Made by a program: the position numbers and the translations under genes. The notes beneath the pieces were generated by a model. The model did no database searches. It had not been told where the DNA came from and saw only the letters and a list, made by a program, of their open reading frames with translations. Shown here one piece after another: positions 21,089 to 45,863 of a stretch of 64,000 nt of DNA. The DNA lies in NCBI GenBank assembly GCA_047495785.1, contig JBLDXI010000003.1:2046001-2110000 (forward strand), given 5' to 3'. Source of the stretch: Lepidodermella squamata. Its lineage: Eukaryota; Animalia; Gastrotricha. Position 1 is the stretch's first letter. Each line of letters starts with the position of its first letter.

Positions 21089-21744
21089 ATGCATAACTAT
21101 CATTACGTCATCCTTTACGTAACAACCATCCTGGTTCTTCTTATTTCCGGAATTCAGTCCTTCGTTCTATCGCTGAAGTTTGATTTTTCGTCACAACCTG
21201 GTACGTTTTCAATCTCATCAGTGGAACGTGTCTTTTTGAAGTGTTTGCAACAGATGCAACCCGATGCAATATTCAAACGATAAAGCGGAAATCAATTTGC
21301 AACAATCCCGGAAATTCATCAAATATTTTGGCGTGCGATTCCAGTTCGCAAATCCTGAAAATTTGTTCGGCGTTCTACGGAAGATGGGACGATAGACCGT
21401 GTTTATCGCTCAATTCAACGGAAGCTGAGGTGAATCATCAACTTCTGAAAAATGTCTATTATGGGGCTGCCAGAGGCCGAGACGATATAACTAGCCTGGT
21501 ATCGAGATTTTGTGATGACAAACATGATTGCACGATTCCATTTCAAAACTTCAACTGCTCAAACTGTACAACACCAAGCCGACCCTACGTAGAAATCGCA
21601 TACGTCTGCACACCAGGTAGGAATATTCATTAATGCCATTATTTCATGATCATTCAAATATTACCTTTTACAGCCACCAGAATCGCAAGTCTTGGAAGAG
21701 TCATGGGAAGAGTGAGAGACCAATCACAATCACAAGCTCGGTGA
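21089..21744 (+). CDS. Secreted SUEL/rhamnose-binding (Gal_lectin)-type lectin domain protein (3 exons: 21089-21200, 21254-21616, 21674-21744)
   Basis: Signal peptide; LAC..ILKICSAFYGRWDDRPC...VSRFCDDKHDCTI...YVEIAYVC pattern; two phase-1 GT-AG introns; AATAAA at ~21767 and 21781. Confidence 0.8.
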
Positions 21745-21857: not shown

Positions 21858-24800
21858 CTAAGAGTGTCCCTCGCCTCCACCACCGCCACCTTCGCCGCCT
21901 TCTCCTTCTCCTTTGCCTTCGCCGTCTTTGTCGCCTGAAGAACCCAAGCTACCAGTCTTTGTTTGCATGTATCGCTTTACAACTTGGCTCCAGTCCAAAA
22001 CACTTTCCATAGGCTCAGGGCCTCTGTTCGTCCGCTGGGCTGTTTCAGCTATAATTACAGCATTGAATTAGTTTCAAGGATTTAACAAAAGACGTAACAA
22101 AAATGTAATAATGTGTTAAGGGTGAAGGGGTCAACCAAAGCTGTGATGGCATGTTGAGAATCTGCGTTGCAAATAAAGTCTCAAACCAAAATTTTTGAAT
22201 TTTTTTCATGTGTGATTTCTGCGAGATTCTTACTGTCGTCGATATCTTTGGGCACAGGGGCCAGGATCAATGCGCTAACGGTTGAGTCGCCACGCCGGCG
22301 ACACAGAAAATATCTCTGAAACCACCAACCAGCTGTTTTCAGCTTAGCGGCTGACGATTCACTTTTCGCACCGCCAGCAGCTGCTCCAGGAGCCGCCCCT
22401 CCTTGTGCGACCCCGTGTGGATCCAAGTGACCACCACCTTGTTCACTCGCCCCAGCTGACTCGAGAACCTTTTCGGCGCCAAGACTTTCGATCTCGGTTA
22501 CGTAGTAGTTAGCATAAATCGTGAACATTTGCCCTGAAAAAGCATTAATCAAATAAAAATCCAGAAAATTGGAGCAAAACTCACTTCCATACTTGAGTAG
22601 GGCCCTAATGTAGAGATAAGGCCTTACAAGCAAATTCAAAGGCGCAGGAGTTGGAGAGATCTAGGGGGAGAGGAATTAGAATGATCAATTAAACTGGGAC
22701 CGTTTCCGAACCTTGATCATGTTTCGAATAAGCTTGGCTCTTCCGAACTTCCACTCTGAATCAGATCTTCTATGAATACGTTGATAAGCTAGAATTGAGA
22801 AGCAAGATTATTTCCTCCACAAGAGACTATTTCAACCAATTACTTTCTGTCATCATAGCGATAAGAAGATTGACCATGACGACCATTACAACCATCATGT
22901 AGAGGCCAAAGAAGAGTTTGTGAAGGGTTCCGCTGAAATCCGGTCCATTCTTGACCTTATACGGGCCTTTCCAAGGCTCTGCCATTGAATAGATGGCAAA
23001 ATGCAGCAAATTAAAAAGACGGAGGGCTGTCCATGGGTCTAAATTGTTGAATTCCTCCTCATCTGCGTCGGGTGTGTCGTCTTCCTCAACCCAGACGTGG
23101 ACAACCCTTGTAGGGTCGCAATCGGGCAAATCAGCCTCAGAATTGTAAGAAGATGTGCTAGTTGCAAGGGCCCTGCTTTGCTGAATCGTACTCGTGAAAT
23201 TTGCAAATTTCTCAGTGAAATTCGCTATCACGCTCGCAAAGACGTCAGAAGTTATATTATCCTGAATCAACGTCGTCTGATATAACGGCGTTGTTGTGTT
23301 GAAAAAACTGTAATTCCCGCTGGTTAGGTTAGCGAACATACTGGAATTCTCCGCCTGACGGCGACTTCTCTGAAAATTCTCCACCAACGCTGCTAAGACG
23401 GCCGATGCATTTGCAACAGTATTGTTGATAGCTTCTTCGTGGCCTTCGCCAGGTCCTAAAATGCTTGTCAAAGGGGTAGTTATGTTTTGATACTGCGAAG
23501 TATCAGTTGCATTGGTTGCGTTTGTCGTGTTTGTCGAATTATCCCCGCTGTTGTCATCGTCGACTGAAATCGGCGTGAATATGCAGACCATTTGCATTGT
23601 AAATCCCGCCATGAAGAGAAGTAGCTAAATTAGGTCAGTCAGTTCATATGAAAAGAATTAGATTGGTGTTTATAAACTTACCACGACAAGAAAAACTGAC
23701 AAATCAATTGAGAGATCTCGAACGATGACAGCGAATGGTCCGAACTTGTGATGGAAAGTGAAGAAGTCCAGGATCAAAGCGAAACCGAATAACAGGACAT
23801 AGGATAGAATTTGGTTCCGAAAATACAGCAGTAGAACTGCATTTCTTTGATCTCCATAAACCATGCTAAATTGACAGGAATAAGCGTCAATGTCTCTTGG
23901 ATAATATCTAGCAAATTACTCGGCAATAAGAGCTCCAACATGCAAGATCACTGCTAGGAGTGATGTCCCAACATTCATTGGGTAAAGGTAACTCAAACCA
24001 GTTCGATCAGTCTGAAGAGTAAGTTCGGCTACCAGAAGACCCGAAAACCAAACCAGTAGGGTCAGTTCAAGCCTGGAATAGAAAAACTCCGTAACAAGCG
24101 CTTTCACCAAATGAGAACTCACCATGTCGGATAAAAGTTTGTTCTATAAGCTATAGCTCCATCGACAGGAATAGCGGCGATAATTGTAATCAGGAACAAA
24201 AACACGATATGGGATGACAAATACGCCATTACTTTGATAATAGGGATTTGGTGATAGTTGTGGGAGAAAGGTAAGCAAAAGTAAGCCCACAACGGTGGGC
24301 AGAGAAGGAAACCAAGAAATAGACCAAACATCTTTCCGATACCCCAATTCAAATTTCCCTGCCAGATGTCAGAGAGGTAACGCTGGACAGCACTATTCGC
24401 CACAACTTCCTTCAACTCGTCTTCGAGTAAGGAATCCAAGAATTGATTCCCCCTCGAGTCAATCGATCGTAAAATGATAGAAGGCGGAGTGTTAGCTGCA
24501 GCCATACCCAACAGATCAGTCGCCATGTAAGCGCAATAACGGCCGATGTCATTGAGATCTTTAGCTCGCTCCTTCTCTTTCAAGGCCAAATTACGATACA
24601 GCTTGGCCAATTTCGCAGCTGTATCCAGAGGAGCTTTAGAGTGAAGGACGAACTCTTCGACCGATGCGTTCTTATTCGTTTTCGAACAGATCATAAGATC
24701 GACGACAAACTTTTTGTCTTCCATTAGCTGTAGGGTGTCATGTTCCTTGGTTAGAAGGTAGCTCAGAATCGGGATATGATTCGCTCCGGCTGCTAGGGAG

Positions 24801-27800
24801 ATTGCCGTCTTGCCTTCTGAGGTCTTCATAGTAGGAGAGGCTCCCGAATCGACGAGAAGTTTCACGACCTCAGTGAACCCGGCTTTAGAAGCATGGCATA
24901 ACGGAGTCCAGTTGTTCTTGTCCACATCGTTGATCTCAGAGCCCTGACCCAGGAGTAAGGAAACCATGTCTGAATGTCCATGCTCGGCAGCTAAGTGAAG
25001 CTAGGGAGACAAAATTTATTGAAAAAATGCCTCAAATCCAAAAATCTCGACTCACCGGGGTGCGACCTCTTTTATCCTTTATATTGAGATGCTCCGTCGA
25101 CTTTGACAGCAGAAGACTTACAACGGTCAAATGTCCATTCTGGCTGGCATAATGCATGGGGGCACTAGAGAGAAAAATCGCGAAATTGAAAGGTTTCGAT
25201 ATCAATTTTAACATACCATGCCATCATGTTGGTCTGCTCATCAGTCTGAATACCTGGGATATTGAGGAGGAGGCGTACAACGCCCTCATGACCGCTGAAC
25301 GAGGCAAAATGCAGCGGTGAGAGCCCGAACTAAAACAAATGTATTGTAAAACTTGGAAATTCTCGAATTTGTTACTCACATCATGCATTATAAGATCTTT
25401 CAGAATTTTATCCCCGATACCACCTGCATGATGGGGAGCTTCGGACTTCACATTAGGTTGAACTCGCATGAGCAGCTCTCGCACGATTTCAGCTTTCCCG
25501 TAGAATGCAGCGACGTGGATAGGGGACAAGCCGTTTTTGACACTGACTGTGGTTAGCATGGTCTTAGAAGGGATGCATTCAAGCACCTCGAAATGGCCTT
25601 CTTTCGCAGCGAGATGGATAGGGGAGTACCCTTCGTTATTCTCATCGGTGAGAGAAGCTCCGGCATCGATCAGGACCCTTACGACATCTTGATGCCCGCC
25701 ACCGGCGGCAAGACTGGATGAAGAAATTCCTCTTATAAGATATCAAAATCTAGAAAGAAACTCACTGGATGGGCAAAGCTTCGTTAGTTTTGTTCCGAAC
25801 AGCTGTTACAATTGCTTTGTTGAATCTCATAAGTTCACGAATCACAGCAACACTCCCCTTGTTGGCAGCAATGTGAGCACATGTCATACCATTCTAAAAT
25901 GAACCAATCATAGGACCTGGCATTGATTAAAGACGAAACCTCACCTTATTAGCTGTAGTCATTAACTCAGGCTTGTATTTCATGAACAGTTTAACTACAT
26001 CCGGATGATCAGATTCTGCTGCTAGATGGAGAGGTGTTTGACCAAGCTGAAAAATGTAACAAATTTTCTTAATATTTCTGAAGAGAGTGATGGGCAATCT
26101 AAAGGTTCAATTCGAAGTGATTATGTAGGGCTCCGCATTAGGGGATATCAGCTTTAAGGGGCTGAAACCTTTCGCAAGAAGCGCTTCCTTCGATCATTTG
26201 TAATGATTGGCTTCGACTGTGATTATAACCAAATATTGTAGAAAATAAAAATTGAATCATAACAGAAATTTAAATCAAACAAAAAGTTCTAAGCGAGGAA
26301 AGATGTAACCAAAACTAAAAATGAATTTTACCGAATCTGCTGCATTCGCATCAGCTCGAAGGTTAAGCAATAGCTGACAGACGTCCTTTCTACCAGCCTC
26401 GGCGGCAAGATGCAAAGGAGTTCGTTCTTCCAACGATAGAGAGTCTGGTGAAGCTCCGTAACGCTCAATCAACAGTTTCACTAGATCAGCGTATCCATTT
26501 CTTGCAGCCTAGAATAAGTCCAATAAATCCATTCCGAAAAGATTGAAACTAAGAATAATTACCAAATGTAGTGGGGTGATTCCGAGCTTCGACTTGGCGT
26601 TAACAAAGGCCTTATACTTCAGCAAAACCTCGCAACACTGAGTGTTCCCGTTTTCAGCTGCCAAATGAATAGCCGCCTTGCCATCCTCGTCAAACACATC
26701 AACACGAGCGTTGTTCTGCAGTAAGACCTCGACGATTTTCGCATGTCCCTTCTCAGAAGCCGTGATAAGGGGCGACCAGCCATTCTTCGCCTGTCGATTC
26801 GCCGCAGCTTGGAAATTATGCCCTAATTGCCTCGCAAATTCTTGAAGAATATCCGCATCTCCAGCCCTGGCGCAGTAATGAAGAGGAGTTTCTTGGGTCA
26901 ACCTCGTCGTTGCTAAGGGCTCAGCGCCGTTGTCAAGTAGGAGTTTCACGATATCGACATGTTCGAAATCTCGATGGATCTGCTCGCTGGTCAACTCAGC
27001 TGCAAAGTGAAGAGCACTTTCTGACTCGTTGTTAGTCATATTGATAAGATTTGTAGCCTCGCGGATTGAGGAGTTGTGAATCATGAAGGCGATGATGGCC
27101 TTGGCAATGTCGTAGTGGCAATAACGGCAGGCGAGGTGGAGGCAGGTTTCGTTTTGCTTCGAAAGTCTTGTTGGATCACCACCATCAGCCAGTAAAATGT
27201 TCATCAAATCGATAAAGCCGTATCGAGCCGCAATGTGCAGAGGTGTCTCAGCCGTCTAAACAGGACAGTTTCTACTATAATATTTTTCCAGAATTGTGCT
27301 GATCTTTTTGTAATGTTCGAACTTCAATTTTTTCAAATTTTTTGGAATTAGGAATTCTTGTTTTTCAAAATAACTTTTAAATTCACAAATTTCCTTCTAA
27401 AATTCCAGGATTTCTTCATTGAACTAAATAAAGGATTGGTACAGAGAATATTCCGTACCTCTTCTGTGGCGTTGTTCACATTCGCTCCAGATTTGAGTAA
27501 CATTTCAGCGCATCGAATTCCATCCGGAAGCCTCGCAGCAATATGAAGCGGGGTCTCCATCGACGAACCGCCCTTGATATCTACCTCCGCACCATAGCCC
27601 AGCAACGTCTGAATGACATCAGGCTGGTTATGCAAAACAGCCAAATGAAGTGCGGTATAGCCGTCTTTTGTCCTCGCATCAACAGGTGAGCCTTTCTGAA
27701 TGAGGGTCTTGACAACATGGGCGTGGCCATTTTCTGCAGCGGCGTGGAGACACAGTGTCCCAGTTCGGTTAGGCATGAAAAGTGGGACACCGCGTTTAAT

Positions 27801-29873
27801 AAAGGTCAACACGGTATCAGCATGACCTCGCTGGAGAGAAAATGAGAAAACATTCAATTTGAAATTTATTAATTAAAATTTTAAAATTTCAAAAAAATCA
27901 AAATTTCAAAAATACTTCACAATTTTAAAAATTATGGAATTATTGAATTTTTAATTTGATTCAAATTCAAAAAGGAAAGGAGAGAGATCAACTTACCTCG
28001 CTAGCCAAATGCATTAAGGTGGACCCGTCTTTTGTCCTCATTTGAACGTTGGCTTTGAATTTTTCAGCCAACAGCTCGACAATGCCCGTATTTCCACTCT
28101 CCGCCGCAACGTGGACTGGCGTTCTCTCGCGTTTGTCCAACAAATGCGCACTCGCATTGAGCACATGAAGCGTTTTTACCATAGACTCGTGACCTAATTT
28201 CGACGCTAGATGCAGCGGAGTTTGGCCGTCAACATTCGGCGCGTCGACATCCGCGTGCGCCTCAAGTACGAGCGCCTTCAAAATTTCAACATCCGCCTTA
28301 ATAACCGCTAGATGCACAACAGTGTTGCCGTTATCTGGGTCGCGCCACGTTGTTTGCTCCTCGACACAGGCGCAAAGTAGGTCACGCACTAGCGCGAAAT
28401 TAGCTGATTCGATTGCGTAACAAATCGGTAGGTAACCGCGGCCGTCTCGCGCGAGGCGAGATTCTTTCTTCATAGCTCGAAGCAGCGCTTGAGCTGAGCT
28501 GTAGCCGCCCGAGGCGCGGGCTGAGGCGATGTGAAGGGGCAATTGGCGCTTTTCGCCGCCGAAAATGTGAGGATCAGCGCCTTTTGCGAGTAATTGACGA
28601 ATTAGGTCATCGTTGCCATTTTGAGCGCAAATGTGAAGGCAAGTGCGCCCTTCCTAAAAATGAAAAAATATTTAATAAATTTAAATTTTAAATTTTAAAT
28701 ATTCAAAAATTTTAAATTTTAAATATTCAAAAAATTTGATTAGATTTTTTAAAATTTTATTGAATTTCGAATTCATCAAAATTATGACTGCATTTTATTC
28801 TAAAAAAATCTTCCTCTTCCTTTCCTTTTTTGAAGCTGAATTAAAGCATTAATGAGAGTCTTACGTCATCTTTGGCATTGACATCCGCGCCCAAATCGAC
28901 GAGTAGGTTGACAATGTGAGTTTTGCTCTCCTCGCAGGCGTAATGCAACGGCGTTTTGCCGCTGTTTTCCGAATGTTCGTTCAACTCCGGGTCATTTTTA
29001 GCCGTCAGTTTCGTCAGTTGAACCTCGAGTGACTCCCAATCTTTCGCCATGGCCATGCCCAAAATCGTCAGCTTGATTTCAGCCATACCTAGACAAAATA
29101 TTCGGTTTATCATAGCAAATCAAATTCCAAGACAAAGCGATACTAATAAGCGATTAAATTTAATCTAAAAAGCTCTGTGATTCTCTTTCTAATTCCGGTC
29201 ATACCATGCTTTTTCTTTTTCTTCGAGCTCGAAATTTTTACACCATCTATTTAATCAATTTATGGAAGTAAATATTGTCTTCCCATGAAAAATTTCGAAA
29301 AATGCTTTTTTCTCAATTTTTTAATATATTTTTATTCTCTCATACCTCTCCTGCGACTTCCAGCGTTTGACGATCGGCGCCTCTGTTGCATGAGCTGCAT
29401 CATTTTTCGCGATTCTTCCTCAGTCTCCTCGTCCGAACTACTGCTCGAGGTTGAATCGCCGCTTTTCTCACCCTTCGCACCGCCATACAACCGGCTCGTA
29501 ACTCGCTGAATGATCTTGCGCTTCGCCTTTGCCCCGCTGGACGCGCGTCCAGGCTCTGATTTCGCCCGTTTTTTCTTCTGCCGCTTGGTTGGAGATCGAC
29601 TCCGCGTAGATTCGGCGTCTGATGTCGATTTGTCATCATCAGTCGTTCCAGGATCGCCGCTTACCACTGTATCCTCCTCGTCATAGTTAATAGGGGCTGG
29701 TTTTCGAGCCTTGCGACGAGTTGATCTTCGCTTCCGACGCTTCGGAGGCATATTTCTCACAAAATTCCTAAAATTATTCTGAAGAAATGGGACATGATTT
29801 AAAATTCAATAAATAAAAGGATGATTGATGATTTTAAGATATTCTTGACATTTGCTGCAGAACTTCACCACAT
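21858..29873 (-). CDS. nompC: NompC/TRPN1 mechanosensitive TRP channel (~20 exons; alternative start ATG 29751)
   Basis: After manual splicing I counted 29 TPLH-type ankyrin repeats. These are followed by a linker (LDTAAKLAKLY..KEKERAKDL), S1-S6, NLLIAMM, TRP box EWKFGR and C-terminal ESVLDWSQVVKRY. Consecutive exons join in frame at GT-AG sites; stop TAG at 21860-21858. Confidence 0.93.
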
Positions 29874-30930: not shown

Positions 30931-33900
30931 ATGCACAAATTACGTCGCAGATTTAAGGCAGCTAATTTGCCTGTACTGACAAAATATTTTCGAAATAAAC
31001 GAGAAGAAAACAGAATTTTGGCTGAAATCAAGGCAACATGTCAAAATCCGAGCGAAGGTAAAGATTTTATTCATTCATTTTTACGATTTTCAATTATTTT
31101 TATCAGGGATTCTGGCCTTTCGTGGAATTACTGGGTCCGGCAAAACAGCCCTCCTATCCCATTTGTTTTCAGATGAAGCCTATCACCAGTTCTTTTTACA
31201 AGAATGCCAAATAGATCGAGTAATTTGGCTGAATTGTTCACGACTCGAATCAGCTTTCATCAAACAGCTGCTACAAATCGGAAAATCATTCTGCAAGAAT
31301 GATCCGTATGCCCTATTCTACAGCGTCGATCAAATGTTGAATTACATGGCATCGAAGTACAAAAACCGGTTCCTAATTGTATTAGACGATGTCCCAAACG
31401 TGGAAATGCTTCAAATTCTACGAAACGACACCCCAAAAGCGGTTTGCATCGCGATTTTTAATGATAGCGATCAAACTTTGATCAAACCCCAACCTGGGTT
31501 GATTCGAAAGTTCGTGGCCATTGATCCGTTGAGTGAAGAACTGAGTGCTGAACTGATGACGCAGACCTACGATCTGAAAAACAAGCTGAAAGATCAACAC
31601 GCGAAGGAATTAGGCAAGCACTGCTTCGGCCATCATTTATTTATCAGTCAAATTGCATCCCGGTTGAATGACTGCCAGAACTGCCAAAAGGAGATGAATG
31701 ACCTGTTAGAGTTCATCAAATCGAACAGTGAATTGACGCCGCTCGATTTGACCAGTCAGTTGTTCGAGTTTAATCTACGGAAAATGGACCCGATTTTGCA
31801 TCGCAACTACCACGCTTTCCTGTTATTCCCAGCCGGTGAACCAGTTAGTTTGGAAGATTTGGAAATTTTGTGGGGCTTCTGCGGTGATCAAGACGCGAAA
31901 GAACGAGCCCTTCAATTCTGCAGTTACTTCGAGAAAAAGTGCCTCATTCGGCGAGTATCAGTTGCAGGGGACATCAAACCGCTGTCAAAGCCCGATAGTG
32001 GGGTCTACTTCATGCTCCACCCGTTTTTATACGAAATCACCTTGGAGTTTTCGAAGAGATTTTACCCGTTCGGGGCTGGCGAAGATGCGCGGAACAATAA
32101 TTGGTACCTCTCCCAACTCCGCCTCAAAGTCGCAAGTGGTTCTTCATGCACCGATGGAGCTAACGTGAAGGCAAATGTCGATATCCTATGTCAAAGCGTG
32201 ATTTATCAAAGACGTCATCTGATCGAACGAATCGTTGAAACTTTGAACCCGGCCGATCTTGCTCCTATTCTTCGAGCTAAGTCCCAATGGTCATCTGGAA
32301 AGGCCTTCCTTCATTTCCTTTATGATTCGACTTGGCATGATAATGTGACTTATTACGACGCGACTAATGCTCCGAGAGGGATTAACCAGGCCTATCGAAT
32401 CATCTACAAAATTTTCCAGAAGCTTCGAGGTTTTGACATAGAGCTGGGGCGAATCTTAGCTGAGAGGTCTGACAATACCAACGGCTCGTTGCTGATATCT
32501 ATTTTCAACGATTTCGAAGAGAAAAGCCAGCATCAACTGGATAGACTACCCCTTAGACGTGCGATAACCAAATTTAAGGCGGATTACGATGAGCAAGTTT
32601 GGTTCGACCAACTTCAGGCGAAGAAAGACCCGGCAGTCACTGCGATTCTACGGAACGATCTCAAAGCTCTGAAAGATATTGTCTTGAAAAGGGAGCAAGA
32701 CCACTCTGTCTATGCATTGATATCTGCAAGATTGGGGAAAATCGATGCTTTGAAGGTTGTTGCTGAGAAAATCGGGCTCGAGAAGCTGATGTCAACAGCA
32801 GATAGCGACGGCAACACGGTTTTCAGCCTAGCAGCTAAAAATGGTCACATCGACATATTGAACTATGCAGTCCATCTTAAATTCGACTGCATAAAATGGC
32901 GGCATCCTAACACGAGTAAAACACTACTTATGATCGCGGCAACTTCAGGACATCTCAAGACTGTCAAGTTCCTAGCTGAGCTGGATGAAGAAAATGTTGG
33001 TAGTGAGATGGACCAATCCTCTGGCGGATACACTGCACTAGCTCTTGCGGCTTCAAACGGCCATCTCGATGTCGTAAAGCACCTCGTTGAACTATGCCCA
33101 GCATCTGTGAGATTTAACTCACAGACTGATAGACAATCAAATGCTTTAGTTGTAGCTGCAGAGGGGGGTCATAAGGATGTGGTCACCTTTTTGTCGGACC
33201 GATTCCCAGAGCTTGTCGATAAGATCAGCCTTAACGTTGCATTGTCAAGCGGCCATGGTGAGGTTGCGAGGATTCTGATCTCAAAACAGCCTGATCTTAT
33301 GAAACCACCTTTCGACCAATCCATTTGGTCACCACTCATGCTAGCTGCTGGGAATTGTGAGCTTGACGATGTCATTTTCATCTACAATCTCTACCCAGAT
33401 GCAGTGGGGATGAGAGATCCTTACTCTGGATGGACTCCATTAGCTGTTGCTGTCAACCGAGCGAGACTTGACGAAACAGTCTTTTTACACGATAAGTACC
33501 CGGAGGCAATGCAATTTCAGGATGAAAACGGCTATACCCCTCTAGCCGAGGCTGCGCAGACTGGTTCGCTGGAAATGTTGACCTATGTATATGAGAAGTA
33601 CCCCGATGCGATATCTCTACTGGATAACAATGGTGAAACGGCTTTGATGCGAGCTGTTCTAGCAGAGCATGGCGACGTGAGGGTTGTGAAGTATCTTTTC
33701 GACAAGAACCCGAATGCTCTCGCTCTACGTAATCGCTACGGTGTTACGCCTTTGATGAACGCTGCATTCAAGTGTCATCTCGAGATTTGTCAGTTCATTT
33801 GTGAAGCTTTCCCGATGTGCGTTGACTGGCGCGATGAGAATGGTAAAACTGCTTTGACTTATGTAAGAAGTGCTGCTTGTTTTGATATCGAACGCCGAAA

Positions 33901-33964
33901 ACGCGTCTGCGATTTCTTGTCCACAAAAATTCAGGATGATAGCGAATTCTTCAATATACTATAG
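30931..33964 (+). CDS. STAND NB-ARC-type NTPase with ~11-12 C-terminal ankyrin repeats (intron 31058-31106; alternative start ATG 30851 via a further intron)
   Basis: Splicing restores Walker A GITGSGKT. Walker B is FLIVLDDV; the GxP-position motif reads CFGHHLFISQIASRL and the MHD-position motif FMLHPFL. Ankyrin repeats follow (DGNTVFSLAAKNGH...NGKTALTY). Confidence 0.85.
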
Positions 33965-34357: not shown

Positions 34358-36625
34358 TTATTGGCCTTTCTTTGGTCGGAACAGGATGCAAGTAGTGGTG
34401 CAGGATACCAAAACGCAGAATACCGAGAAGGACATAGATCGCATTAGAGGAGATGGCTGCACTAAAATGATGAGAAGACAAGCAATAGAGAGCGTGCCTA
34501 TATTTGAGACCATCAAACGGATCACATTAAGATCGGCATACGCCTTTAACTGCACGCTATTCCTTAACCCGTATCCCATTATGGCTAAGAACACGTGTGA
34601 TATGGAGTGAAGAGCAAGAATAAGCTTTTGGTAAAACGTCCTATTCTGATAGCAAATTTCCACCATACTGAAAAGTTCAGTATCTGTCATCGAATGGTAT
34701 TCCCTCGATACCAGGATATTTTTCACTATTGGGGTATCGACAATCAGCCAAACTCCAACGTAAAAAGCCGTAAATACCGAAACTGACAAAAACGATGCTT
34801 TCAGGAAACGGGTCGAAAGCTTTTCGTAGGTTGCTGGCCTGAATTTTGTAGTACTTCTTTTACGAGGTTCAAAGATTCCATTTCTACGTTGGTTGCATTC
34901 TTTCAGCCTCATTTTATGCTCAATCGAGTATTTCAGGTAATAATGGAAGCCAAGTCGCGATAATGGTTGGATCAAGACCATAGATAGCGATATAGCAGTG
35001 AGAATCTGACCAGCAACGCAAGTTCCAGATCCTGGCTGCAACAAGTTGAGAATCGCAACTATGTCAAGGAGCGTGAGACCTGTGAATGTAACAAAGTACC
35101 CCAACTTGCTGTCTCGAACACCAAAACCTTTACGACCCATTCGAATGACTAAAAATATCACGCGGGTAGCAAATGACACGACACTAATTGTAAAGACAGA
35201 CCATAAGAAAGCATCCGGAACTGTCAGGACTTCAGTCCTAACCCGCCTCCTATCAAGCGGAGGCTGCCTGTCTGCAGTATACCAAATGAGTTTGCTGACA
35301 AACTTTGTTATCACATAACTCTCCAGATTGGTCACCGAAGCATTTTCCTTCGGCTTGATGTAGTATCTGATTTGCCGCTTCGCCTCAGGGGTCCACTGGA
35401 CGACAACATACGTTTCGTCATCATGCTCCCCTCGCTCTGAGTATCTGAACAATCCAGCGAATCGGAAACCCTGAAATTCTGTCCTAGCTACAGACGCATT
35501 AACTGCACGAGAGACAGCTGCCGGCTCGCGACTGTAGTCACTTAGTGTCATATTTTGTTTGTTGAGCATGTTTTCAGCTGCGTCAAGTGACATTACCGCT
35601 TGAAGAGCTGCGTCATGGCAGATGGCTAGTTTATCCACATCCTGCATTTGCGATGCATTAACGACGTTTTCGTAGAAATCACTGGAAAAAGACGAAAAAT
35701 CCATGTCCAGAGACGATGTCAAACTCTGATCCTCTGTAGCGGAAGCCCAAGCAATCCAATAAACATGTCTCATTTGGTCTGAAATCGAAGACTTGCTGCA
35801 GCCAGGGTAAACGCCGTCAGAAATTTTTTCCGCGTCAACGTAAGACGATAAACTGAAGATGAAAGCGTATTTAGGTCCTGTTAGGCCGAATTTGATAGCC
35901 TGGCATAGGAGACGGATAAGTAATGTTGGGCCCGACACGACTATAAGTACTCTAGTATCAGATGCGACTAGATCCAGCATGGTTTTGTCATCGAAATCAG
36001 GAACACATGCGAAGAAAGAAACTTCAAATGAAAATTTAATAGCTTCAGTGGCGATATAGCTGCCAATGGTGTAGTCGTAAATCGAATTAGCAGTGGTTAA
36101 AACTCCAAATCTGGCCCATTTCCCAACCGATGAAATGAAGCGCAGGTAAGCATAGGTCACTAACTCACCGGTTCCTCGTAATCGATAGAAATTAGGGAAC
36201 CGATCTCGCTTAGCCGTAAGTTGGGGTGCACTACATCCTATGGCAGTTTGAACCATATTCAAGTGGTGTAACTGGGGCGCCATGGCAAGACACCCCGTAG
36301 CGAACCATCCGCCGACTATAAGCGGTGAGAGATGAGACTCATTGAAATTTCGATGAAAGCTGACAGCTGATTTCGGCATGTACACACCATTGGGCCCTTC
36401 ATCTTTGAAAACAGGCTGTAAATGATAATGAGGTAAGATGTCTGGCCTTGAGTTGATTTTGTTCAGAACTAGTTCAATGCTAGCTCTGCAAGCTTCCCCT
36501 CGCTTGGGCTCATCACCGGTTACCGGGATGAATGATAAAATCCGGAGAGTTTCTGGTTTCCCTTCAACTTCGAGTGGAAGTTGGAGCGAAAAAGCGATGG
36601 TTAAAATCCAAATTGTCTTATACAT
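34358..36625 (-). CDS. Class C GPCR, GABA-B-like, copy A7 (intronless; likely start MYKTIW at 36625)
   Basis: ORF 34358..36739; PVTGDEPKRGEAC, FPNFYRLRGTGEL and GEHDDETYVVVQWTP motifs; 7 TM. Confidence 0.92.
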   Translation of the reverse strand: MYKTIWILTIAFSLQLPLEVEGKPETLRILSFIPVTGDEPKRGEACRASIELVLNKINSRPDILPHYHLQPVFKDEGPNGVYMPKSAVSFHRNFNESHLSPLIVGGWFATGCLAMAPQLHHLNMVQTAIGCSAPQLTAKRDRFPNFYRLRGTGELVTYAYLRFISSVGKWARFGVLTTANSIYDYTIGSYIATEAIKFSFEVSFFACVPDFDDKTMLDLVASDTRVLIVVSGPTLLIRLLCQAIKFGLTGPKYAFIFSLSSYVDAEKISDGVYPGCSKSSISDQMRHVYWIAWASATEDQSLTSSLDMDFSSFSSDFYENVVNASQMQDVDKLAICHDAALQAVMSLDAAENMLNKQNMTLSDYSREPAAVSRAVNASVARTEFQGFRFAGLFRYSERGEHDDETYVVVQWTPEAKRQIRYYIKPKENASVTNLESYVITKFVSKLIWYTADRQPPLDRRRVRTEVLTVPDAFLWSVFTISVVSFATRVIFLVIRMGRKGFGVRDSKLGYFVTFTGLTLLDIVAILNLLQPGSGTCVAGQILTAISLSMVLIQPLSRLGFHYYLKYSIEHKMRLKECNQRRNGIFEPRKRSTTKFRPATYEKLSTRFLKASFLSVSVFTAFYVGVWLIVDTPIVKNILVSREYHSMTDTELFSMVEICYQNRTFYQKLILALHSISHVFLAIMGYGLRNSVQLKAYADLNVIRLMVSNIGTLSIACLLIILVQPSPLMRSMSFSVFCVLVSCTTTCILFRPKKGQ

Positions 36626-37032
36626 TTCAGGTGAAAAAATTGAAAAATAGTGCGAAAGGTCGTCTATCCCCATATGAGCGATAGGTATATGTAAATAGTC
36701 AGATTTCAGGAAATAATAAACAGACCTGATAAAGACCATGCTGCTCCAAACCTAGATGTCTCCAATCGGCACAAAGGATAGCTTATAGTGTCCATAGTCT
36801 GAGCGCAATCATCCTTCATATGTTTATTACTGTATTACCCAGGCTTTTTTGACTGCCATTACTGATGTGGCTTCATTTTACTATCTGGGTTGTGATCGAA
36901 AGAAAAGTGCAAACTTTGATTCATTAACAATTGAATGGATGAACCTGGCGAGCCAATTTTCTTACCACAGCTAGTTCTCAGGTTTGGCTAACGCCAGGTA
37001 AAATTTGACTCTCATTGGGTCGTTCAATGTGG

Positions 37033-37134
37033 CATTACATACATTACATACATACATACATTACATACATACATACATACATACATTACATAAATTACAT
37101 ACATTACACACATTACACACATTACAATTACATT
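37033..37134 (+). repeat. Compound (CATA)n/(CATTA)n microsatellite
   Basis: cattacatacattacatacatacatacattac... directly visible. Confidence 0.95.
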
Positions 37135-37382
37135 TTCCCTTCGATCACAACCCTGTATATCAATTTATCCTCCTGAAAGTGTTCACTAGTGCACTATTTT
37201 TCTGGTAATCCGCATCCTTGTTAGATGTTCCTTGTGGTAATATTAAAGATTTTTGGCAACAGCAACATCATTAAATTAATCCTGGTTTATTCTTGCAAAC
37301 ATCCATAGTGAATGTCGAATCATGAATCAACGCATCATTTTTATACAGTTATTATGGAATAGCTAGTACGTAAATTCAAAAC

Positions 37383-39782
37383 CTACGATTGCTCCACATT
37401 CTTTCGGTGAGTGAATAGGATAACGCTAGCGCATATCGATGTAACTGAAGTGAAGCAAGACAGCGCAATGGATTGACTAGCGGGCGAATTTCTGAGTAAA
37501 GCTACGACAAGCACGCAAGCCAGGAGAAGGGTCGTCAAATTGATAGTGGCAAGTCTGATTCTCACGAGATCCTTGTAGACTCTAACCTGCTGGCTGTTAC
37601 GAAGTGAGTAGCTGATAATTGAACTGAGCACCAGGAGAAGTGCATGGATGAGCGAAGGAACAATTACCCACGCTGTTTCAAAGCTGGAGCGGCACACAAA
37701 AGTATATACGATATGCAGGGTGTCTGTTTCTAGGTCATAATCCCCGCCAGGGTTTGTCAGCTCAGTTCGCTGCAGAAAGGGAGAATCAACCGTAAACCAG
37801 ATTGCAAGGTAGACTATGGTTAATATAGTGATTACGAAGAACCCTGCGAGAAACACAAGTTTCCGCTTTCGAATATAACGCTTAGGGTCGAGATTTTTCT
37901 TCCTTTCCGAAATTTGACTGTTCGCCGGTGATGCCGAAGTGGGCACGTTTTTACGACCTCTAGTTCCGAATCGCTTTCTTGACATCTTGATAGTCCCAGT
38001 AGTTTTGAAACTTGAACTGCTTTCATCAGGTACAATGCTGAAAGTTCCGATTGAGTAGTGGAATAAAAGCCTGATAAAGGTCTGGTTTTGAAGGAGTGTG
38101 ATGCCTAGTATAGGAAGGATTCTCTCGGCGAAGCAGTAAAGCTTTGACGTAAAATTGTCTGCCGGCAAAGCGAAGATGATCGCGGCAGAGTCAAGGGAGA
38201 TGCAACCCATCAACGACGTGATGGTGTCCCATGGGTAACCAAAGTTCCTAGTTCTGTCACCGGCAAAAACCTCGTTGAAAATACCTCGAAATGACGCAAT
38301 TTTGAAAACGAAAGTCGAACAAGACAACGCGACAATGAACCAAAGGAATGCTATGGGAACAGACTTGTTTTCAATGCTGAGAGACCATTTATCTTTCGGA
38401 GGTAGTCCATTCGAAGTGAACCATGTGGGCTCGGCAATAAATTTTCTAATTCTATAGCTGTCCATGTTGAAAACGGAATCGCCCTCTTTTGGTTTGATGA
38501 ACATCAGAAATTGGCGTTTCTTTTCAGGAGTCCATTAAGCCACAACATAAGTTTCGTCATCATGCTCACCTCTTGCTGAATACTGAAAATTTCCAGCAGT
38601 TCTGAGGCCTTTGTAGACTGTCTTGAAAACAGTTTCATTCAACACCCTCATAATCAACCTCGGCGTTATTTTGTAGTTTCTCAGCGATGTGTTGTGTTCT
38701 TCTTTTAGAATAGCTTCAGTGGCATTAAGAACTAACGCAGCTTGAAGGGCGGAATCGTGGCATATCGCTCGCTTCTCATAGTCGAGAAGGACAGTAGCAT
38801 TAGTCCCGACGTATTCGTTGAAAATGTCCGTGAACTTGGTGTAGTTATAGTTAAGCGTCGAAATCTCGCTAGGTTCGTCCGTCTCAGAAGTAGCGGCCAC
38901 CCAAAATGTGTACTTCATCTGTTCTCTAACGACCGCTTTCGAGCAGTTGGGCATCGGCATGTCGGCTAGATTGTCCGGGTTGAAGTACGAGCCGTAATTC
39001 ATCATGAATGCGTATTTGGGACCGGTCATTCCTGCTTTATAGGCGACGCACAAAAATCTGATCAATTGGGTCGACGAGCTAACAAAAACCACCCGGGTGT
39101 CTGTCTTAATCAAGTCAGAAATCGCATTATCGTCAAAATCGGTAACAAATCCGAGGTAAGAAACTTCGAAGCCATTGCGATTTGCTTCTGTTGACATGTA
39201 TAACGCCATATCGTAATCGAATGCGCTTGTTGCATCGGCTAGAATTCCAAAACGCTGCCATTTCCCATAGTCTCGCATGAATCTGAGCTGAGCATACGAC
39301 AAAAGTCTGCCAATTCCTCTTAATTTGTACAAGTTTGGGTATCGATCTCTTTTTGCCTCTAGGAGAGGACTGATACAACCAGTGGCAGTGTGCACCATAT
39401 TGAGATGATGAAGTTGAGTTCCCCCAGAAACACAGCCAGGAGTATACCATCCCCCTATCATGAATGGGGATTGATACACCCGACTGTTTGGTGGTTGTTC
39501 TTCGAATTTTCGCACGAAATCAACCGTTGCTTTTGGCACGTTGCGCCCGAGTATCCCTTCATCGACGAAATAGGCTTCGATACTGAATTCCGGCAGAATG
39601 TCCATCCTTCGATTAACCTCTCTGAAGACCAACTCAGTTGCAGCCATGCAGGACAGCCCTTTCCGCGGTTCGTCCCCGGTCATTGGTATTATAACCATAA
39701 CTTGCAATGAATTACTTTGTCCCATGTCTCCTTGGCCCATGGTAGATATAACCAGAGCGAGAATTAAAAATGCTGAAAGCAT
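37383..39782 (-). pseudogene. Class C GPCR copy A8 with a single in-frame premature TAA (38537-38535)
   Basis: ORFs 38535..39782 and 37383..38504 are in the same frame. It reads YVVA*WTPE where paralogues have YVVVQWTPE. No other lesion seen. Confidence 0.8.
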
Positions 39783-41797: not shown

Positions 41798-42668
41798 TTA
41801 AGGATTTGCGGCGATATTCTTGATAATCCAGTCGTAGAAGTAGCTTGTCTTGCCGAAGACAGGCGGGCGGGGTCCGGCGCAAGAGCTTTCGCCGAAGGAA
41901 ACGAGACCGACAAGGGATGCGGCTCCGTCAGCACCGGTGAGGGTCAACGGACCACCAGAGTCGCCAACACAAGGGGCCGAGTCAGTGTTCTCAGCGCAGA
42001 CCATCGAGTCGTGCCAGAGGGATCCCTGAAAATTCAAAAAATTGCGACACGCCACACTTATATTGGGTAGAACTTACCCAGAAGCCCTTGCAGTAGCTAG
42101 CAGATCGGCCGTAGATGGTGGTCCACTGGGCGATTTGAGGGTAGACCCTCGGGACGTTGAGTCCAGGGTTGGTGTTGCCCCAACCAGCAACAACAACAGG
42201 CTTCTGATCGACCTCAGTCTCAGCGGTCGGGATGCAGACGCGGTTGACGTAGTTGCTGTTGAAGTTGATCTTGCTGCTGAGCTTCATCAATCCAACATCG
42301 TAGCCACGGCCGACCTTGCCATACATCTCGTGCTTGATGACCTTGGAGACCTTGATAACCTGAGCATCAGGATCGACAGCCTTCGCCGAGTTGTTCACGG
42401 CGCCCAAGCGGATCTGGTACGTTGAAGCCGAGCTGGTCAGGCAGTGAGCAGCAGTTATGATCCACTGGTCGTCGATGATCGAGCCGCCGCAAGAATGGCT
42501 ACCGCTAAGCGATTGCATGGAGATGAGCCATGGGAACTGGCCTTTCTGCGCATTTATGCCGCCGATGATGCGGGAAATCGGCACTTTAGTCTTACCGCAG
42601 CCTGGCTCGTTAATAGCAGCCGAAGCGCATGCGACCAAACAGGCCGCGATTACAATAGTGACCTTCAT
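41798..42668 (-). CDS. Secreted S1A serine protease (chymotrypsin/elastase-like pocket; intron 42077-42026)
   Basis: Signal peptide, R|IIGG activation site and TAAHC, YDVGL, GDSGGP triad motifs. Residue 189 is Ala rather than Asp. Confidence 0.95.
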
Positions 42669-45448: not shown

Positions 45449-45863
45449 TTCTCGTGGCCAATTATATTGGATTATGAGAAATCGTGGGGAGTTTTATAGC
45501 ATAGAATTCTGCATGACATCGCACAACAGACACACATCCTCTGTAGACGTTTCAATCGGAAGTCACGTTCAGAAATACGCGTGGTCGTGATCATAATATG
45601 GACTGAATAATATACTCATCTCGAAGTTTCTAAAATGACTTTCAGCATGATACTGCTTTCAACATGCTTGCAATATTTGAAAGTTTTAAAGTTATTAATA
45701 AAATTGTTGACCTGAAGTGGTGCAACCTGAATATCTCAGTTGTTAAATTTTTACGACTGAACGGTGAATTGACGTCAATAATCGATTTACTATCAAGATT
45801 TTTATTGTTCGATTTCGCTTTGAGCGGTGTTGGTAATTAGCTGGCAATATTTTCTCCGATCTC

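What the first reader, a model, noticed from the sequence alone, without database searches (positions are those of the whole stretch)
23034..23576. NompC has a ~180-aa extracellular S5-pore turret with 14 N-glycan sequons and a furin site
Seen: within one open exon between S5 and the pore helix lies a Thr/Ser/Asn-rich insert. It has 14 N-x-S/T sequons, RSRR at 23369-23358, a weak internal duplication (NITTPL/NTTTPL) and an acidic stretch (EEDDTPDADEEE) next to the pore. Known: characterised NompC channels have a much shorter loop here and are gated through the intracellular ankyrin spring. Inference: an extracellular tether or glycan antenna, or proteolytic maturation/gating as in ENaC.
Basis: partly seen in the sequence, partly recalled or inferred. 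Interest (0 to 1): 0.75.

Follow-up and report, generated by a model that had tools for sequence, protein, structure and literature searches.

The report
TRPN channel with giant glycosylated pore turret
A touch/hearing-type (NompC/TRPN) ion channel gene of an unidentified small invertebrate has a 177-residue, sugar-site-rich outer loop beside its pore where 135 other TRPN channels have roughly 20-30 residues; a distant relative keeps the loop with its protease-cutting motif and single cysteine, so it is real and probably functional, but its role is untested.

Summary
On the minus strand, one exon (23624-22844) encodes the end of S5, a 177-aa loop (23570-23040), the pore helix and S6. The loop has 14 N-x-S/T sequons (4.7±1.8 expected from its composition), RSRR at 23369-23358, one Cys and an acidic tract next to the pore helix. 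The proposed internal duplication is not above chance.

The gene is a full-length TRPN. Its linker/S1 exon matches Drosophila NOMPC (5VKQ) at E 2.5e-107, and the exons are colinear with a hemichordate TRPN.

In 135 TRPNs from many phyla the S4-S5-linker-to-S6 distance is 106-161 residues (median 114). Here it is 274.

A metagenomic ortholog is 92% identical in the linker exon, with saturated synonymous sites. It keeps a 161-aa turret with 10 sequons, an aligned RFRR-Q, the same Cys block and the acidic tract. Three tandem paralogs in related metagenome contigs have turrets of 84 and 116 aa (the third is incompletely read).

RNA support is thin: one spliced joint elsewhere in the gene, and short records inside the turret.

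Glycosylation, cleavage and function are inferred, not shown. Earlier notes of this scan report the same feature in neighbouring TRPN paralogs of this genome.

Verdict: a new variant of a known channel family, of moderate to high interest.

The parts
22844..23624 (-). Exon encoding the end of S5, the turret, the pore helix, the filter region and S6
   Evidence: Open frame. GT..AG introns on both sides, read from the sequence. The junction gives MMTE-T-YQRIH, which matches the canonical MMSDTYQRIQ.
23571..23624 (-). C-terminal part of S5 (LLLFMAGFTMQMVCIFTP)
   Evidence: Aligns with S5 of 18 canonical TRPNs. Identical in the ortholog L001.
23040..23570 (-). 177-aa S5-pore turret insert (exon residues 19-195)
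   Evidence: The homologous Saccoglossus TRPN has no counterpart for 23543-23091. Canonical turrets are roughly 20-30 aa. The anchor distance is 274 against a median of 114.
23193..23540 (-). Cluster of 14 N-x-S/T sequons
   Evidence: Enrichment over shuffles. Density is 7.9 against 0.9 per 100 aa in the cytosolic domain.
23358..23369 (-). RSRR, a proprotein-convertase (furin-type) R-x-R-R motif followed by Gln
   Evidence: Aligned with RFRR-Q in L001. Composition-based chance is 0.0026 here and 0.0054 in L001.
23346..23441 (-). First predicted amphipathic helix (exon residues 62-93); RSRR lies near its C-terminal end
   Evidence: AlphaFold2 model, pLDDT about 73-75 in this stretch. L001 also shows helices around its RFRR. 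Low to moderate confidence.
23160..23249 (-). Second predicted amphipathic helix (exon residues 126-155), with two N-F-T sequons seven residues apart
   Evidence: L001 has NVT...NVT at the same 7-residue spacing in a predicted helix.
23088..23132 (-). Conserved block DLPDCDPTRVVHVWV holding the turret's only Cys (codon 23120-23118)
   Evidence: Aligned with DLPECPPAEVVHIWI in L001. Each L002 paralog turret as read has one Cys followed two residues later by Pro.
23052..23087 (-). Acidic tract EEDDTPDADEEE just before the pore helix
   Evidence: L001 has EEDEAVIQTEEA at the aligned place. Net charge of the turret is -20 here and -21 in L001.
22974..23045 (-). Pore helix and filter region (NLDPWTALRLFNLLHFAI-YSMAEP); the canonical filter Gly is replaced by Ser
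   Evidence: Alignment A1: the canonical sequence is FFSLFGLVEP, and the window and L001 have HFAIYSMAEP. PDB match to NOMPC residues 1495-1560.
22851..22925 (-). S6 (LHKLFFGLYMMVVMVVMVNLLIAMM)
22712..22788 (-). Exon with the TRP box (YQRIHRRSDSEWKFGRAKLIRNMIK)
22534..22584 (-). 51-nt in-frame, stop-free GT..AG intron in the C-terminal region, spliced out in run X1
   Evidence: Joint 22532->22584 in X1, with CT..AC on the + strand. The 17 codons are absent from L001 and L002 homologs. Sequence.
23682..23864 (-). Exon with S4, the S4-S5 linker (HHKFGPFAVIV) and the start of S5
24122..25000 (-). Exon with the last ankyrin repeats, the linker-helix domain, pre-S1 and S1
   Evidence: phmmer against the PDB: NOMPC 5vkq_A residues 1059-1329, E 2.5e-107. 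54% identity to Saccoglossus TRPN. 92% identity to L001.
25059..29119 (-). Ankyrin-repeat exons of the same gene
   Evidence: Open segments with ankyrin motifs. Colinear tblastn hits to Saccoglossus TRPN residues 201-1071.

Best explanation
This is a genuine coding expansion of the extracellular S5-pore loop ('turret') of an otherwise intact, strongly constrained TRPN (NompC-type) channel. It belongs to a lineage-specific group of TRPN paralogs with enlarged turrets.

Shown here:
- The insert is in frame and is kept open in two species whose synonymous sites are saturated.
- It is unique in length among 135 TRPNs surveyed.
- Its sequence evolves fast, yet five things persist: its length, a roughly 3-fold excess of N-glycosylation sequons, one R-x-R-R-Q motif, one Cys in a conserved block, and an acidic tract at the pore mouth.

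Inferred mechanism:
- The loop enters the ER lumen and is heavily N-glycosylated.
- It is partly structured, with two amphipathic helices per subunit carrying glycans on one face. In the tetramer it forms a glycan-covered canopy above the pore.
- The acidic base of the canopy concentrates cations at the outer mouth.
- The single Cys can link neighbouring subunits or a partner protein.
- The R-x-R-R site is probably cut by a furin-type convertase in the secretory pathway. That would leave a two-chain subunit, and the cut could serve maturation or regulation.

Whether the canopy also anchors the channel to extracellular matrix is open.
For: - Family: NOMPC 5VKQ match at E 2.5e-107 for the linker/S1 exon and a match to its pore/S6. 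TRP box present. Exons colinear with Saccoglossus TRPN, leaving 23543-23091 unmatched.
- Coding status: only one frame is open, P(no stop) 5e-5; third-position composition resembles the ankyrin exons; no strong donor-like site inside.
- Ortholog L001/P0001 keeps an uninterrupted 161-aa turret with pS 0.7-0.87. Flank dN is 0.066 and turret dN 0.85.
- Sequons: 14 against 4.7±1.8 expected, and 10 against 2.9±1.5 in the ortholog. Density is 7.9 against 0.9 per 100 aa in the cytosolic part.
- R-x-[KR]-R is aligned in both orthologs, with chance 0.0026 and 0.0054. RTKR and RKTR occur in two of three L002 paralogs.
- One Cys in each turret read, in a C-x-P context.
- Rarity: anchor distance is 106-161 (median 114) and sequons 0-3 in 135 TRPNs, against 274 and 14 here. 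See also the alignment.
- Helices: AlphaFold2 predicts helices 62-93 and 126-155 at pLDDT about 72-76, and comparable helices in the ortholog.
- Transcription: a GT..AG joint in run X1 within this gene and X1 records inside the turret, with no skip joint there.
- Analogy: TRPV1 S5-P loops form a cap with acidic portals and a cross-linkable Cys, and the cap affects conductance, open probability and selectivity (PMC8041747).
Against: - Nothing here demonstrates glycan occupancy, cleavage, disulfides or channel function.
- RNA evidence is sparse. X1 is only guessed to be RNA. The splice joint has 25 nt on its shorter side and comes from one contig. X1 could contain genomic DNA.
- RSRR sits in a predicted helix and has a sequon 4-6 residues downstream (3-5 in the ortholog). 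Both could hinder a convertase.
- One L002 paralog lacks a clean R-x-[KR]-R.
- The structure models are of low overall confidence (mean pLDDT 63-65, pTM 0.31-0.39) and rest on very few sequences over the insert.
- Turret dN is close to saturation, which a merely tolerated loop would also show.
- The filter Gly is lost, so conduction properties cannot be assumed to be NompC-like.
- The survey lists only the best 120 of 442 word-search hits plus HMMER representatives. Long-turret TRPNs in unsampled lineages are not excluded.
Confidence: 0.6

Rival explanations
1. Tolerated low-complexity loop expansion. The turret is a fast-drifting spacer with no function of its own. The sequons are kept only to keep an exposed loop soluble and protease-resistant, and the R-x-R-R and Cys serve local structure without cleavage or cross-linking.
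For: Turret dN is 0.85 with about 29% identity between orthologs, while the flanks are nearly identical. Most of the N-terminal 40 aa and the inter-helix stretch are predicted disordered. Turret length varies widely among paralogs: 84 and 116 aa in L002 and 161-177 aa here. About 440 aa is reported in another paralog (not tested here).
Against: Length, sequon excess, the aligned R-x-R-R-Q, the Cys block and the acidic tract all persist across saturated synonymous divergence. None of 135 other TRPNs has drifted to a comparable length, so expansion is not a general tendency of this loop.
Confidence: 0.25
2. Part of the segment is an unrecognised in-frame intron or an alternatively spliced cassette, so the mature channel has a shorter turret.
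For: This gene has at least one in-frame, stop-free 51-nt intron (22534-22584) that an ORF reader would miss. The RNA evidence over the turret is sparse.
Against: Introns here are 51-57 nt, while the insert is 531 nt. No GT[AG]AG donor lies inside it and third-position composition is exon-like. The ortholog keeps the whole stretch open in the same frame despite saturated dS. Sequon enrichment spans 23540-23193. X1 records lie inside the turret and no skip joint is reported there.
Confidence: 0.07
3. The gene is a decaying or non-conducting paralog. Loss of the selectivity-filter Gly and the bloated loop reflect relaxed constraint after duplication.
For: The filter FG is replaced by YS. Many TRPN paralogs exist in this lineage.
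Against: The linker/S1 exon is 92% identical to the ortholog and S5/pore/S6 dN is 0.066, with synonymous sites saturated. All exons are open and colinear with a canonical TRPN. The same filter sequence is conserved in the ortholog. The gene is spliced in run X1.
Confidence: 0.05

Closest known systems
Drosophila NOMPC / TRPN1 (PDB 5VKQ) and canonical TRPNs of arthropods, molluscs, annelids, echinoderms, hemichordates and vertebrates
   Same: A long N-terminal ankyrin array, the linker-helix domain, six transmembrane helices, the S6 motif NLLIAMM and the TRP box EWKFGRAKLIRNM. The linker/S1 exon is about 45-54% identical.
   Different: Canonical turrets are roughly 20-30 aa and often carry a single sequon (seen in 11 of the 18 printed). 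The anchor distance is 106-161 against 274 here. The canonical filter FG(L/Q/M) is YSM here. No convertase motif or turret Cys was seen in the canonical sequences inspected.
TRPV1 extracellular cap formed by the S5-P loops (Nadezhdin et al. 2021, PMC8041747)
   Same: [quoted passage not shown] Deleting it changes conductance, open probability and selectivity.
   Different: The TRPV1 loop is about 23 residues, against 177 here. It belongs to a different subfamily. It has no dense sequon cluster and no convertase motif.
Polycystin/mucolipin (TOP) domain of TRPP and TRPML channels (own knowledge)
   Same: An extracellular or luminal N-glycosylated domain of about 200 aa sits over the pore as a tetrameric lid. 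TRPML1 is reported to be proteolytically cleaved within that loop.
   Different: That domain lies between S1 and S2, not between S5 and the pore helix. It is a conserved alpha/beta fold and shows no sequence relationship to this turret.
Furin activation of ENaC
   Same: Convertase motifs in an extracellular part of a channel linked to mechanosensation, with cleavage during secretory transit.
   Different: An unrelated fold. Activation of ENaC requires two cuts that release an inhibitory tract, whereas only one motif is conserved here. Cleavage is not shown.
Extracellular helical cap of K2P potassium channels (own knowledge)
   Same: Two helices per subunit in the loop before a pore helix, joined at the apex by an inter-subunit disulfide, which force ions to enter through side portals.
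   Different: A different channel superfamily branch, with about 60 aa and a dimer. Helices in the turret here are only predicted, at modest confidence.

Membership tests
TRPN (NompC) channels | Very long N-terminal ankyrin-repeat array (about 28-29 repeats) | tested here: met
   Ankyrin Pfam hits. Ankyrin-motif exons from 29119 to 24735. Colinear with residues 201-1071 of Saccoglossus TRPN. The exact repeat number was not counted.
TRPN (NompC) channels | Linker-helix / pre-S1 domain homologous to NOMPC | tested here: met
   phmmer against the PDB: 5vkq_A residues 1059-1329, E 2.5e-107. The next hits match the ankyrin part only.
TRPN (NompC) channels | S1-S6 with pore helix, the S6 motif NLLIAMM and the TRP box EWKFGRAKLIRNM | tested here: met
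TRPN (NompC) channels | Canonical selectivity-filter sequence FFxLFG(L/Q/M) | tested here: not met
   The window and its ortholog have HFAIYSMAEP, with Gly replaced by Ser. This marks a divergent pore. It does not outweigh the features that are met.
TRPN (NompC) channels | Groups with TRPNs in a phylogeny | tested here: inconclusive
   In a tree of 42 linker/S1 regions it forms a 100/100 pair with L001. That pair sits in a 96/91 clade with the metagenomic paralogs and Gordionus TRPN. No non-TRPN outgroup was included.
TRPN (NompC) channels | Mechanical gating through the ankyrin spring tethered to microtubules | not testable with these tools
   Needs electrophysiology.
Proprotein-convertase (furin-type) substrates | R-x-[K/R]-R motif | tested here: met
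   RSRR-Q at 23369-23358, aligned with RFRR-Q in the ortholog.
Proprotein-convertase (furin-type) substrates | Motif exposed to the secretory-pathway lumen or cell exterior | tested here: inconclusive
   Follows from TRP topology, since the motif lies between S5 and the pore helix, and fits the sequon excess. The motif lies in a predicted helix.
Proprotein-convertase (furin-type) substrates | Actual cleavage after the motif | not testable with these tools
   Needs protein work.
N-glycosylated pore-loop TRP channels | Sequons in an extracellular loop beyond chance | tested here: met
   14 against 4.7±1.8 expected, and 10 against 2.9±1.5 in the ortholog. Density is 7.9 against 0.9 per 100 aa in the cytosolic part.
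N-glycosylated pore-loop TRP channels | Glycan occupancy | not testable with these tools
   Needs PNGase F treatment or glycoproteomics.

The most novel reading that the evidence does not exclude
The enlarged turrets form a convertase-processed, disulfide-linked, glycan-clad extracellular cap that ties the pore domain to extracellular matrix or a cap-cell protein. These TRPN channels would then be held from both sides of the membrane, with an outer tether on the pore loop in addition to the inner ankyrin spring. Force or proteolysis from outside would act directly on the pore.
Probability: 0.12. Interest if true: 0.85.

Novelty: new variant of a known kind. Interest (0 to 1): 0.6.

Why it matters
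TRPN/NompC is the best-understood tethered mechanotransduction channel, and all current models place the force-bearing element (the ankyrin spring) inside the cell. A TRPN lineage that has built a large, conserved extracellular structure directly onto the pore loop offers a natural experiment. That structure is glycosylated, probably cleavable and carries a Cys. It can show whether the outer pore of a TRPN can take part in tethering, maturation or control of permeation. It would also extend the idea of an 'S5-P loop cap', so far documented for TRPV1, to another subfamily at about seven times the size. If the loop proves to be only a tolerated spacer, it still shows how much insertion this site can accept, which is useful for tagging TRPN channels.

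Tried and rejected
- Internal duplication (NITTPL/NTTTPL): tested by local alignment against shuffles and not significant. A repeat finder failed on a strand argument and was not repeated.
- The HMMER search of representatives with the linker exon was swamped by giant ankyrin proteins. Only about 19 of 150 hits were TRPNs. I added a word search with Tachypleus NompC restricted to its TM region.
- Word search with the turret exon found a single relative, P0001. There is therefore no broader family by turret sequence.
- Organism identity was not resolved. The tree, cluster names and the scan's notes leave it as an unidentified small invertebrate with 51-57-nt introns in this gene and 42% GC. The run names are coded.
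- Jin et al. 2017 (the NOMPC structure paper) is not held. Two earlier paper-reading runs failed on term length.
- P0022/L006, another metagenomic TRPN paralog: its S5-pore part was not found in an ORF and I did not pursue it.
- No fold search was run, because both models are of low confidence (pTM 0.31 and 0.39) and matches would be meaningless.
- Exons were searched one by one by reference. In one search a script printed a 56-aa string joining the two S5 exon ends, but that string was not used in any search.
- dN/dS between the two X2 haplotypes could not be computed, because read laying returns no contig sequences and is capped at one call.
Full report
**What is there**

The finding lies on the minus strand, inside a multi-exon gene that runs from about 29.1 kb to 22.2 kb. 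ORF listing and direct reading show one exon, 23624-22844. A 57-nt GT..AG intron (23681-23625) precedes it and a 55-nt intron (22843-22789) follows it.

The exon encodes, in order:
- the end of S5 (LLLFMAGFTMQMVCIFTP);
- 177 residues (23570-23040);
- the pore helix (NLDPWTALRLFNLLHFAI);
- the filter region (YSMAEP);
- the P-S6 loop and S6 (…VNLLIAMM).

The next exon (22788-22712) continues with T-YQRIHRRSDSEWKFGRAKLIRNMIK, the TRP box.

**Check of the observation**

- The 14 N-x-S/T sequons are present, between 23540 and 23193.
- RSRR is at 23369-23358, and EEDDTPDADEEE at 23087-23052.
- Shuffling the loop's residues gives 4.7±1.8 sequons, and none of 20,000 shuffles reached 14.
- The same protein's cytosolic part has 9 sequons in 995 aa, or 0.9 per 100, against 7.9 per 100 in the loop.
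- Only the coding frame is open. The other five frames carry 4-12 stops, and base shuffles stay open 5e-5 of the time. Third-codon-position composition matches the ankyrin exons.
- R-x-[KR]-R is expected from composition in 0.26% of shuffles.
- The claimed weak duplication is not above chance: score 41 against 30.8±5.3, with a shuffle maximum of 55.

**Family**

- The exon at 25000-24122 (last ankyrin repeats, linker helices, S1) matches Drosophila NOMPC (5vkq_A, residues 1059-1329) at E 2.5e-107. All lower PDB hits match only its ankyrin part.
- The pore/S6 part matches NOMPC residues 1495-1560.
- tblastn with a Saccoglossus TRPN (P0277) gives a colinear chain from its residue 201 to 1633. 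It leaves window 23543-23091 without a counterpart.
- The gene is therefore a complete TRPN. It is the only one in this window.
- One departure from the family: the canonical filter FFxLFG(L/Q/M)VEP reads HFAIYSMAEP, with Gly replaced by Ser.

**How unusual the loop is**

I collected TRPNs from two searches: the HMMER representative search and a word search with Tachypleus NompC restricted to its TM region. Cluster names show the range of taxa: Hydra, Xenia, nematodes, a nematomorph, Seison, chelicerates, crustaceans, a myriapod, beetles, molluscs, annelids, a nemertean, a brachiopod, a bryozoan, echinoderms, a hemichordate, amphioxus, fishes and frogs.

In the 135 proteins that carry both anchors, the distance from FGP[W/F] in the S4-S5 linker to LIAMM in S6 is 106-161 residues. 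The median is 114 and the 90th percentile 118. That stretch holds 0-3 sequons. The window gene measures 274, with 14 sequons.

Printed segments and alignment A1 show canonical turrets of roughly 20-30 aa. Eleven of the 18 printed carry a single sequon, so one glycosite beside the pore may be ancestral. This lineage has multiplied it.

**Relatives that share the loop**

The turret exon found only one relative in the 5.8-billion-protein collection: P0001, on a 6.1-kb metagenome scaffold, L001. L001 carries the ortholog.

- Its linker/S1 region is 92% identical, and S5, the pore helix and S6 are nearly identical.
- Synonymous sites are saturated (pS 0.7-0.87; flank dN 0.066).
- Its turret is 161 aa and only about 29% identical (dN 0.85).
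- It nevertheless keeps 10 sequons (2.9±1.5 expected) and RFRR-Q aligned with RSRR-Q.
- It keeps a block DLPECPPAEVVHIWI, against DLPDCDPTRVVHVWV here, with the only turret Cys.
- It keeps an acidic tract, and its net charge is -21 against -20 here.

Metagenome contigs L002-L004 come partly from the same project as L001. They carry three tandem TRPN paralogs. Two have complete turrets of 84 and 116 aa, and the third is cut by an intron. As far as read, each turret has 2-4 sequons and one Cys in a C-x-P context. Two of the three have RTKR or RKTR.

In the tree, the window gene and L001 pair at 100/100. The nearest rows are these paralogs.

Earlier notes of this scan report further TRPN paralogs of this same genome, just outside my window, with large turrets and furin-type sites. 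I could not read that DNA. The metagenomic paralogs show the same pattern independently.

**Is it in the mRNA?**

Run X1 has one record that joins 22532 to 22584. It skips 51 nt with GT..AG on the gene's strand. The 17 codons skipped are exactly those missing from the L001 and L002 homologs. That record also carries a loose end that I recognise, from my own knowledge, as a SMART cDNA primer sequence. X1 therefore holds spliced RNA of this gene.

X1 records also lie inside the turret (joints at 23149/23255, 23345/23453 and 23396/23502), and no skip joint is reported there.

This is thin evidence: short records, low depth, and 25 nt on one side of the joint. The spliced 51-nt intron is itself in frame and stop-free, so an open frame alone does not prove that a short piece is exonic. 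The stronger argument is evolutionary. Two species with saturated synonymous divergence both keep about 500 nt open in the same frame with the same feature set.

**Structure**

AlphaFold2 on alignment A1, which is very shallow over the insert, gives mean pLDDT 63 and pTM 0.31. Two long helices stand out, at residues 62-93 and 126-155, with pLDDT about 72-76. The stretches before and between them score low.

The ortholog model also has long helices in its turret, and RFRR lies in the first of them.

In the second helix the hydrophobic residues recur every three to four positions. Two N-F-T sequons lie exactly seven residues apart. The ortholog has NVT…NVT at the same spacing. The loop is therefore not mucin-like: Pro is 3.4% and N+T+S is 36%. 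It looks more like a partly helical, N-glycan-bearing module. These models are leads only.

**Most likely mechanism**

All of the following is inferred. By TRP topology the loop faces the ER lumen and later the outside of the cell. The sequon excess argues that it is glycosylated at many sites.

In a tetramer, four such loops would sit directly above the pore. The closest documented case is the TRPV1 cap, which is built from S5-P loops. That cap has acidic side portals and a central Cys that can cross-link, and deleting it changes conductance, open probability and selectivity (PMC8041747).

Three features here suggest roles:
- The conserved acidic tract adjoining the pore helix would attract cations.
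- No Cys is visible in the other outward-facing loops that I read (S1-S2, S3-S4, P-S6). The single turret Cys therefore has no evident intra-subunit partner. It would be free, linked to a neighbouring subunit, or linked to another protein.
- The conserved R-x-R-R-Q fits a furin-type convertase site. Cutting there would leave a two-chain subunit: ankyrin array to S5 plus about 70 aa of turret, and about 105 aa of turret plus pore helix, S6 and the C-terminus.

A sequon 4-6 residues after the site (3-5 in the ortholog) could modulate cleavage. The helical context could also hinder it.

I put about 0.8 on a real, translated, glycosylated extracellular insert. I put about 0.35-0.4 on actual cleavage and about 0.1-0.15 on a tether role.

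**Rivals**

1. A tolerated, drifting spacer. The near-saturated dN favours this. The persistence of five features, and the absence of such expansions in 135 other TRPNs, argue against it.
2. A hidden intron or cassette. This is unlikely for the reasons given above.
3. A decaying paralog. This is contradicted by very strong constraint on the rest of the protein and by the conserved altered filter.

**Literature**

Full-text searches for TRPN/NompC with pore loop, turret, glycosylation or furin, and a reading of the TRP-N evolution paper (PMC4494053), found no description of a TRPN with an enlarged or processed turret.

**Verdict**

- This is a new variant of a known channel family, already noticed by this scan in neighbouring paralogs of the same genome.
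- Interest is 0.6.

Noticed in passing
window 203-20637, 34358-39782, 43133-47788, 50946-52631 (both strands): The window is dominated by at least eleven mostly single-exon paralogs of a class-C GPCR type. Two copies were scanned with Pfam: both hit ANF_receptor and one also 7tm_3, just under that model's cut-off. One copy (37383-39782) is split into two ORFs. This is a large tandem receptor array flanking the TRPN gene.
   Followed up: partly
window 31163-33964 (+): A single-exon 933-aa ORF with a weak NB-ARC match (E 1.7e-4, below the cut-off) followed by a long ankyrin array. It is an NLR-like architecture, next to the TRPN gene's 5' end.
   Followed up: partly
window 21241-21633 (+): A 130-aa ORF with a sub-threshold match to the SUEL (galactose/rhamnose-binding) lectin domain. 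It lies just beyond the 3' end of the TRPN gene on the opposite strand. A sugar-binding neighbour of a sugar-rich channel may be coincidence.
   Followed up: no
window 22974-22991 (-): The canonical TRPN filter Gly (FFxLFG) is Ser here (HFAIYSM), and also in the ortholog L001. The L002 paralogs have FA or FG at this place. The S6 Asn (VNLLIAMM) is retained in this gene.
   Followed up: partly
window 22534-22584 (-): A 51-nt GT..AG intron that is in frame and free of stops, so it reads as coding in an ORF scan. It is spliced out in run X1 and absent from the homologs.
   Followed up: yes
window 22959-23297: Run X2 holds two contigs over the C-terminal half of the turret. One is identical to the window and the other has 28 differences in 339 bases, each at about half the depth of neighbouring single contigs. 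Flanking coding contigs differ from the window by only 1.7-1.9%. This suggests unusually high allelic divergence in the turret.
   Followed up: no
L001 29-1993 against window 28653-26278: The ortholog encodes in one 654-aa ORF what the window splits into four ankyrin exons. Several short introns have therefore been gained or lost between the two species.
   Followed up: no
L002 1-19000 (also L003, L004): A metagenome contig carries three TRPN genes in tandem, with turrets of 84 and 116 aa (the third is cut by an intron). In one of them S6 reads LLPLLIAIL, with Pro in place of the conserved Asn.
   Followed up: partly
window 23193-23222 (-); L001 turret: Sequons sit exactly seven residues apart (N-F-T…N-F-T here, N-V-T…N-V-T in the ortholog) within a predicted amphipathic helix. 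The middle hydrophobic residue falls on the hydrophobic stripe, so the glycans would line one face of the helix.
   Followed up: partly
P0161, P0235, P0277, P0220, P0208, P0279, P0250, P0228, P0259, P0027, P0262 (turret segments): Eleven of the 18 canonical TRPN turret segments printed contain exactly one N-x-S/T sequon. A single glycosite beside the pore may be an ancestral TRPN feature that I did not find discussed.
   Followed up: no
window 41798-42668 (-): A trypsin-family serine protease gene (Pfam Trypsin, E 8.7e-34) lies among the receptor genes.
   Followed up: no
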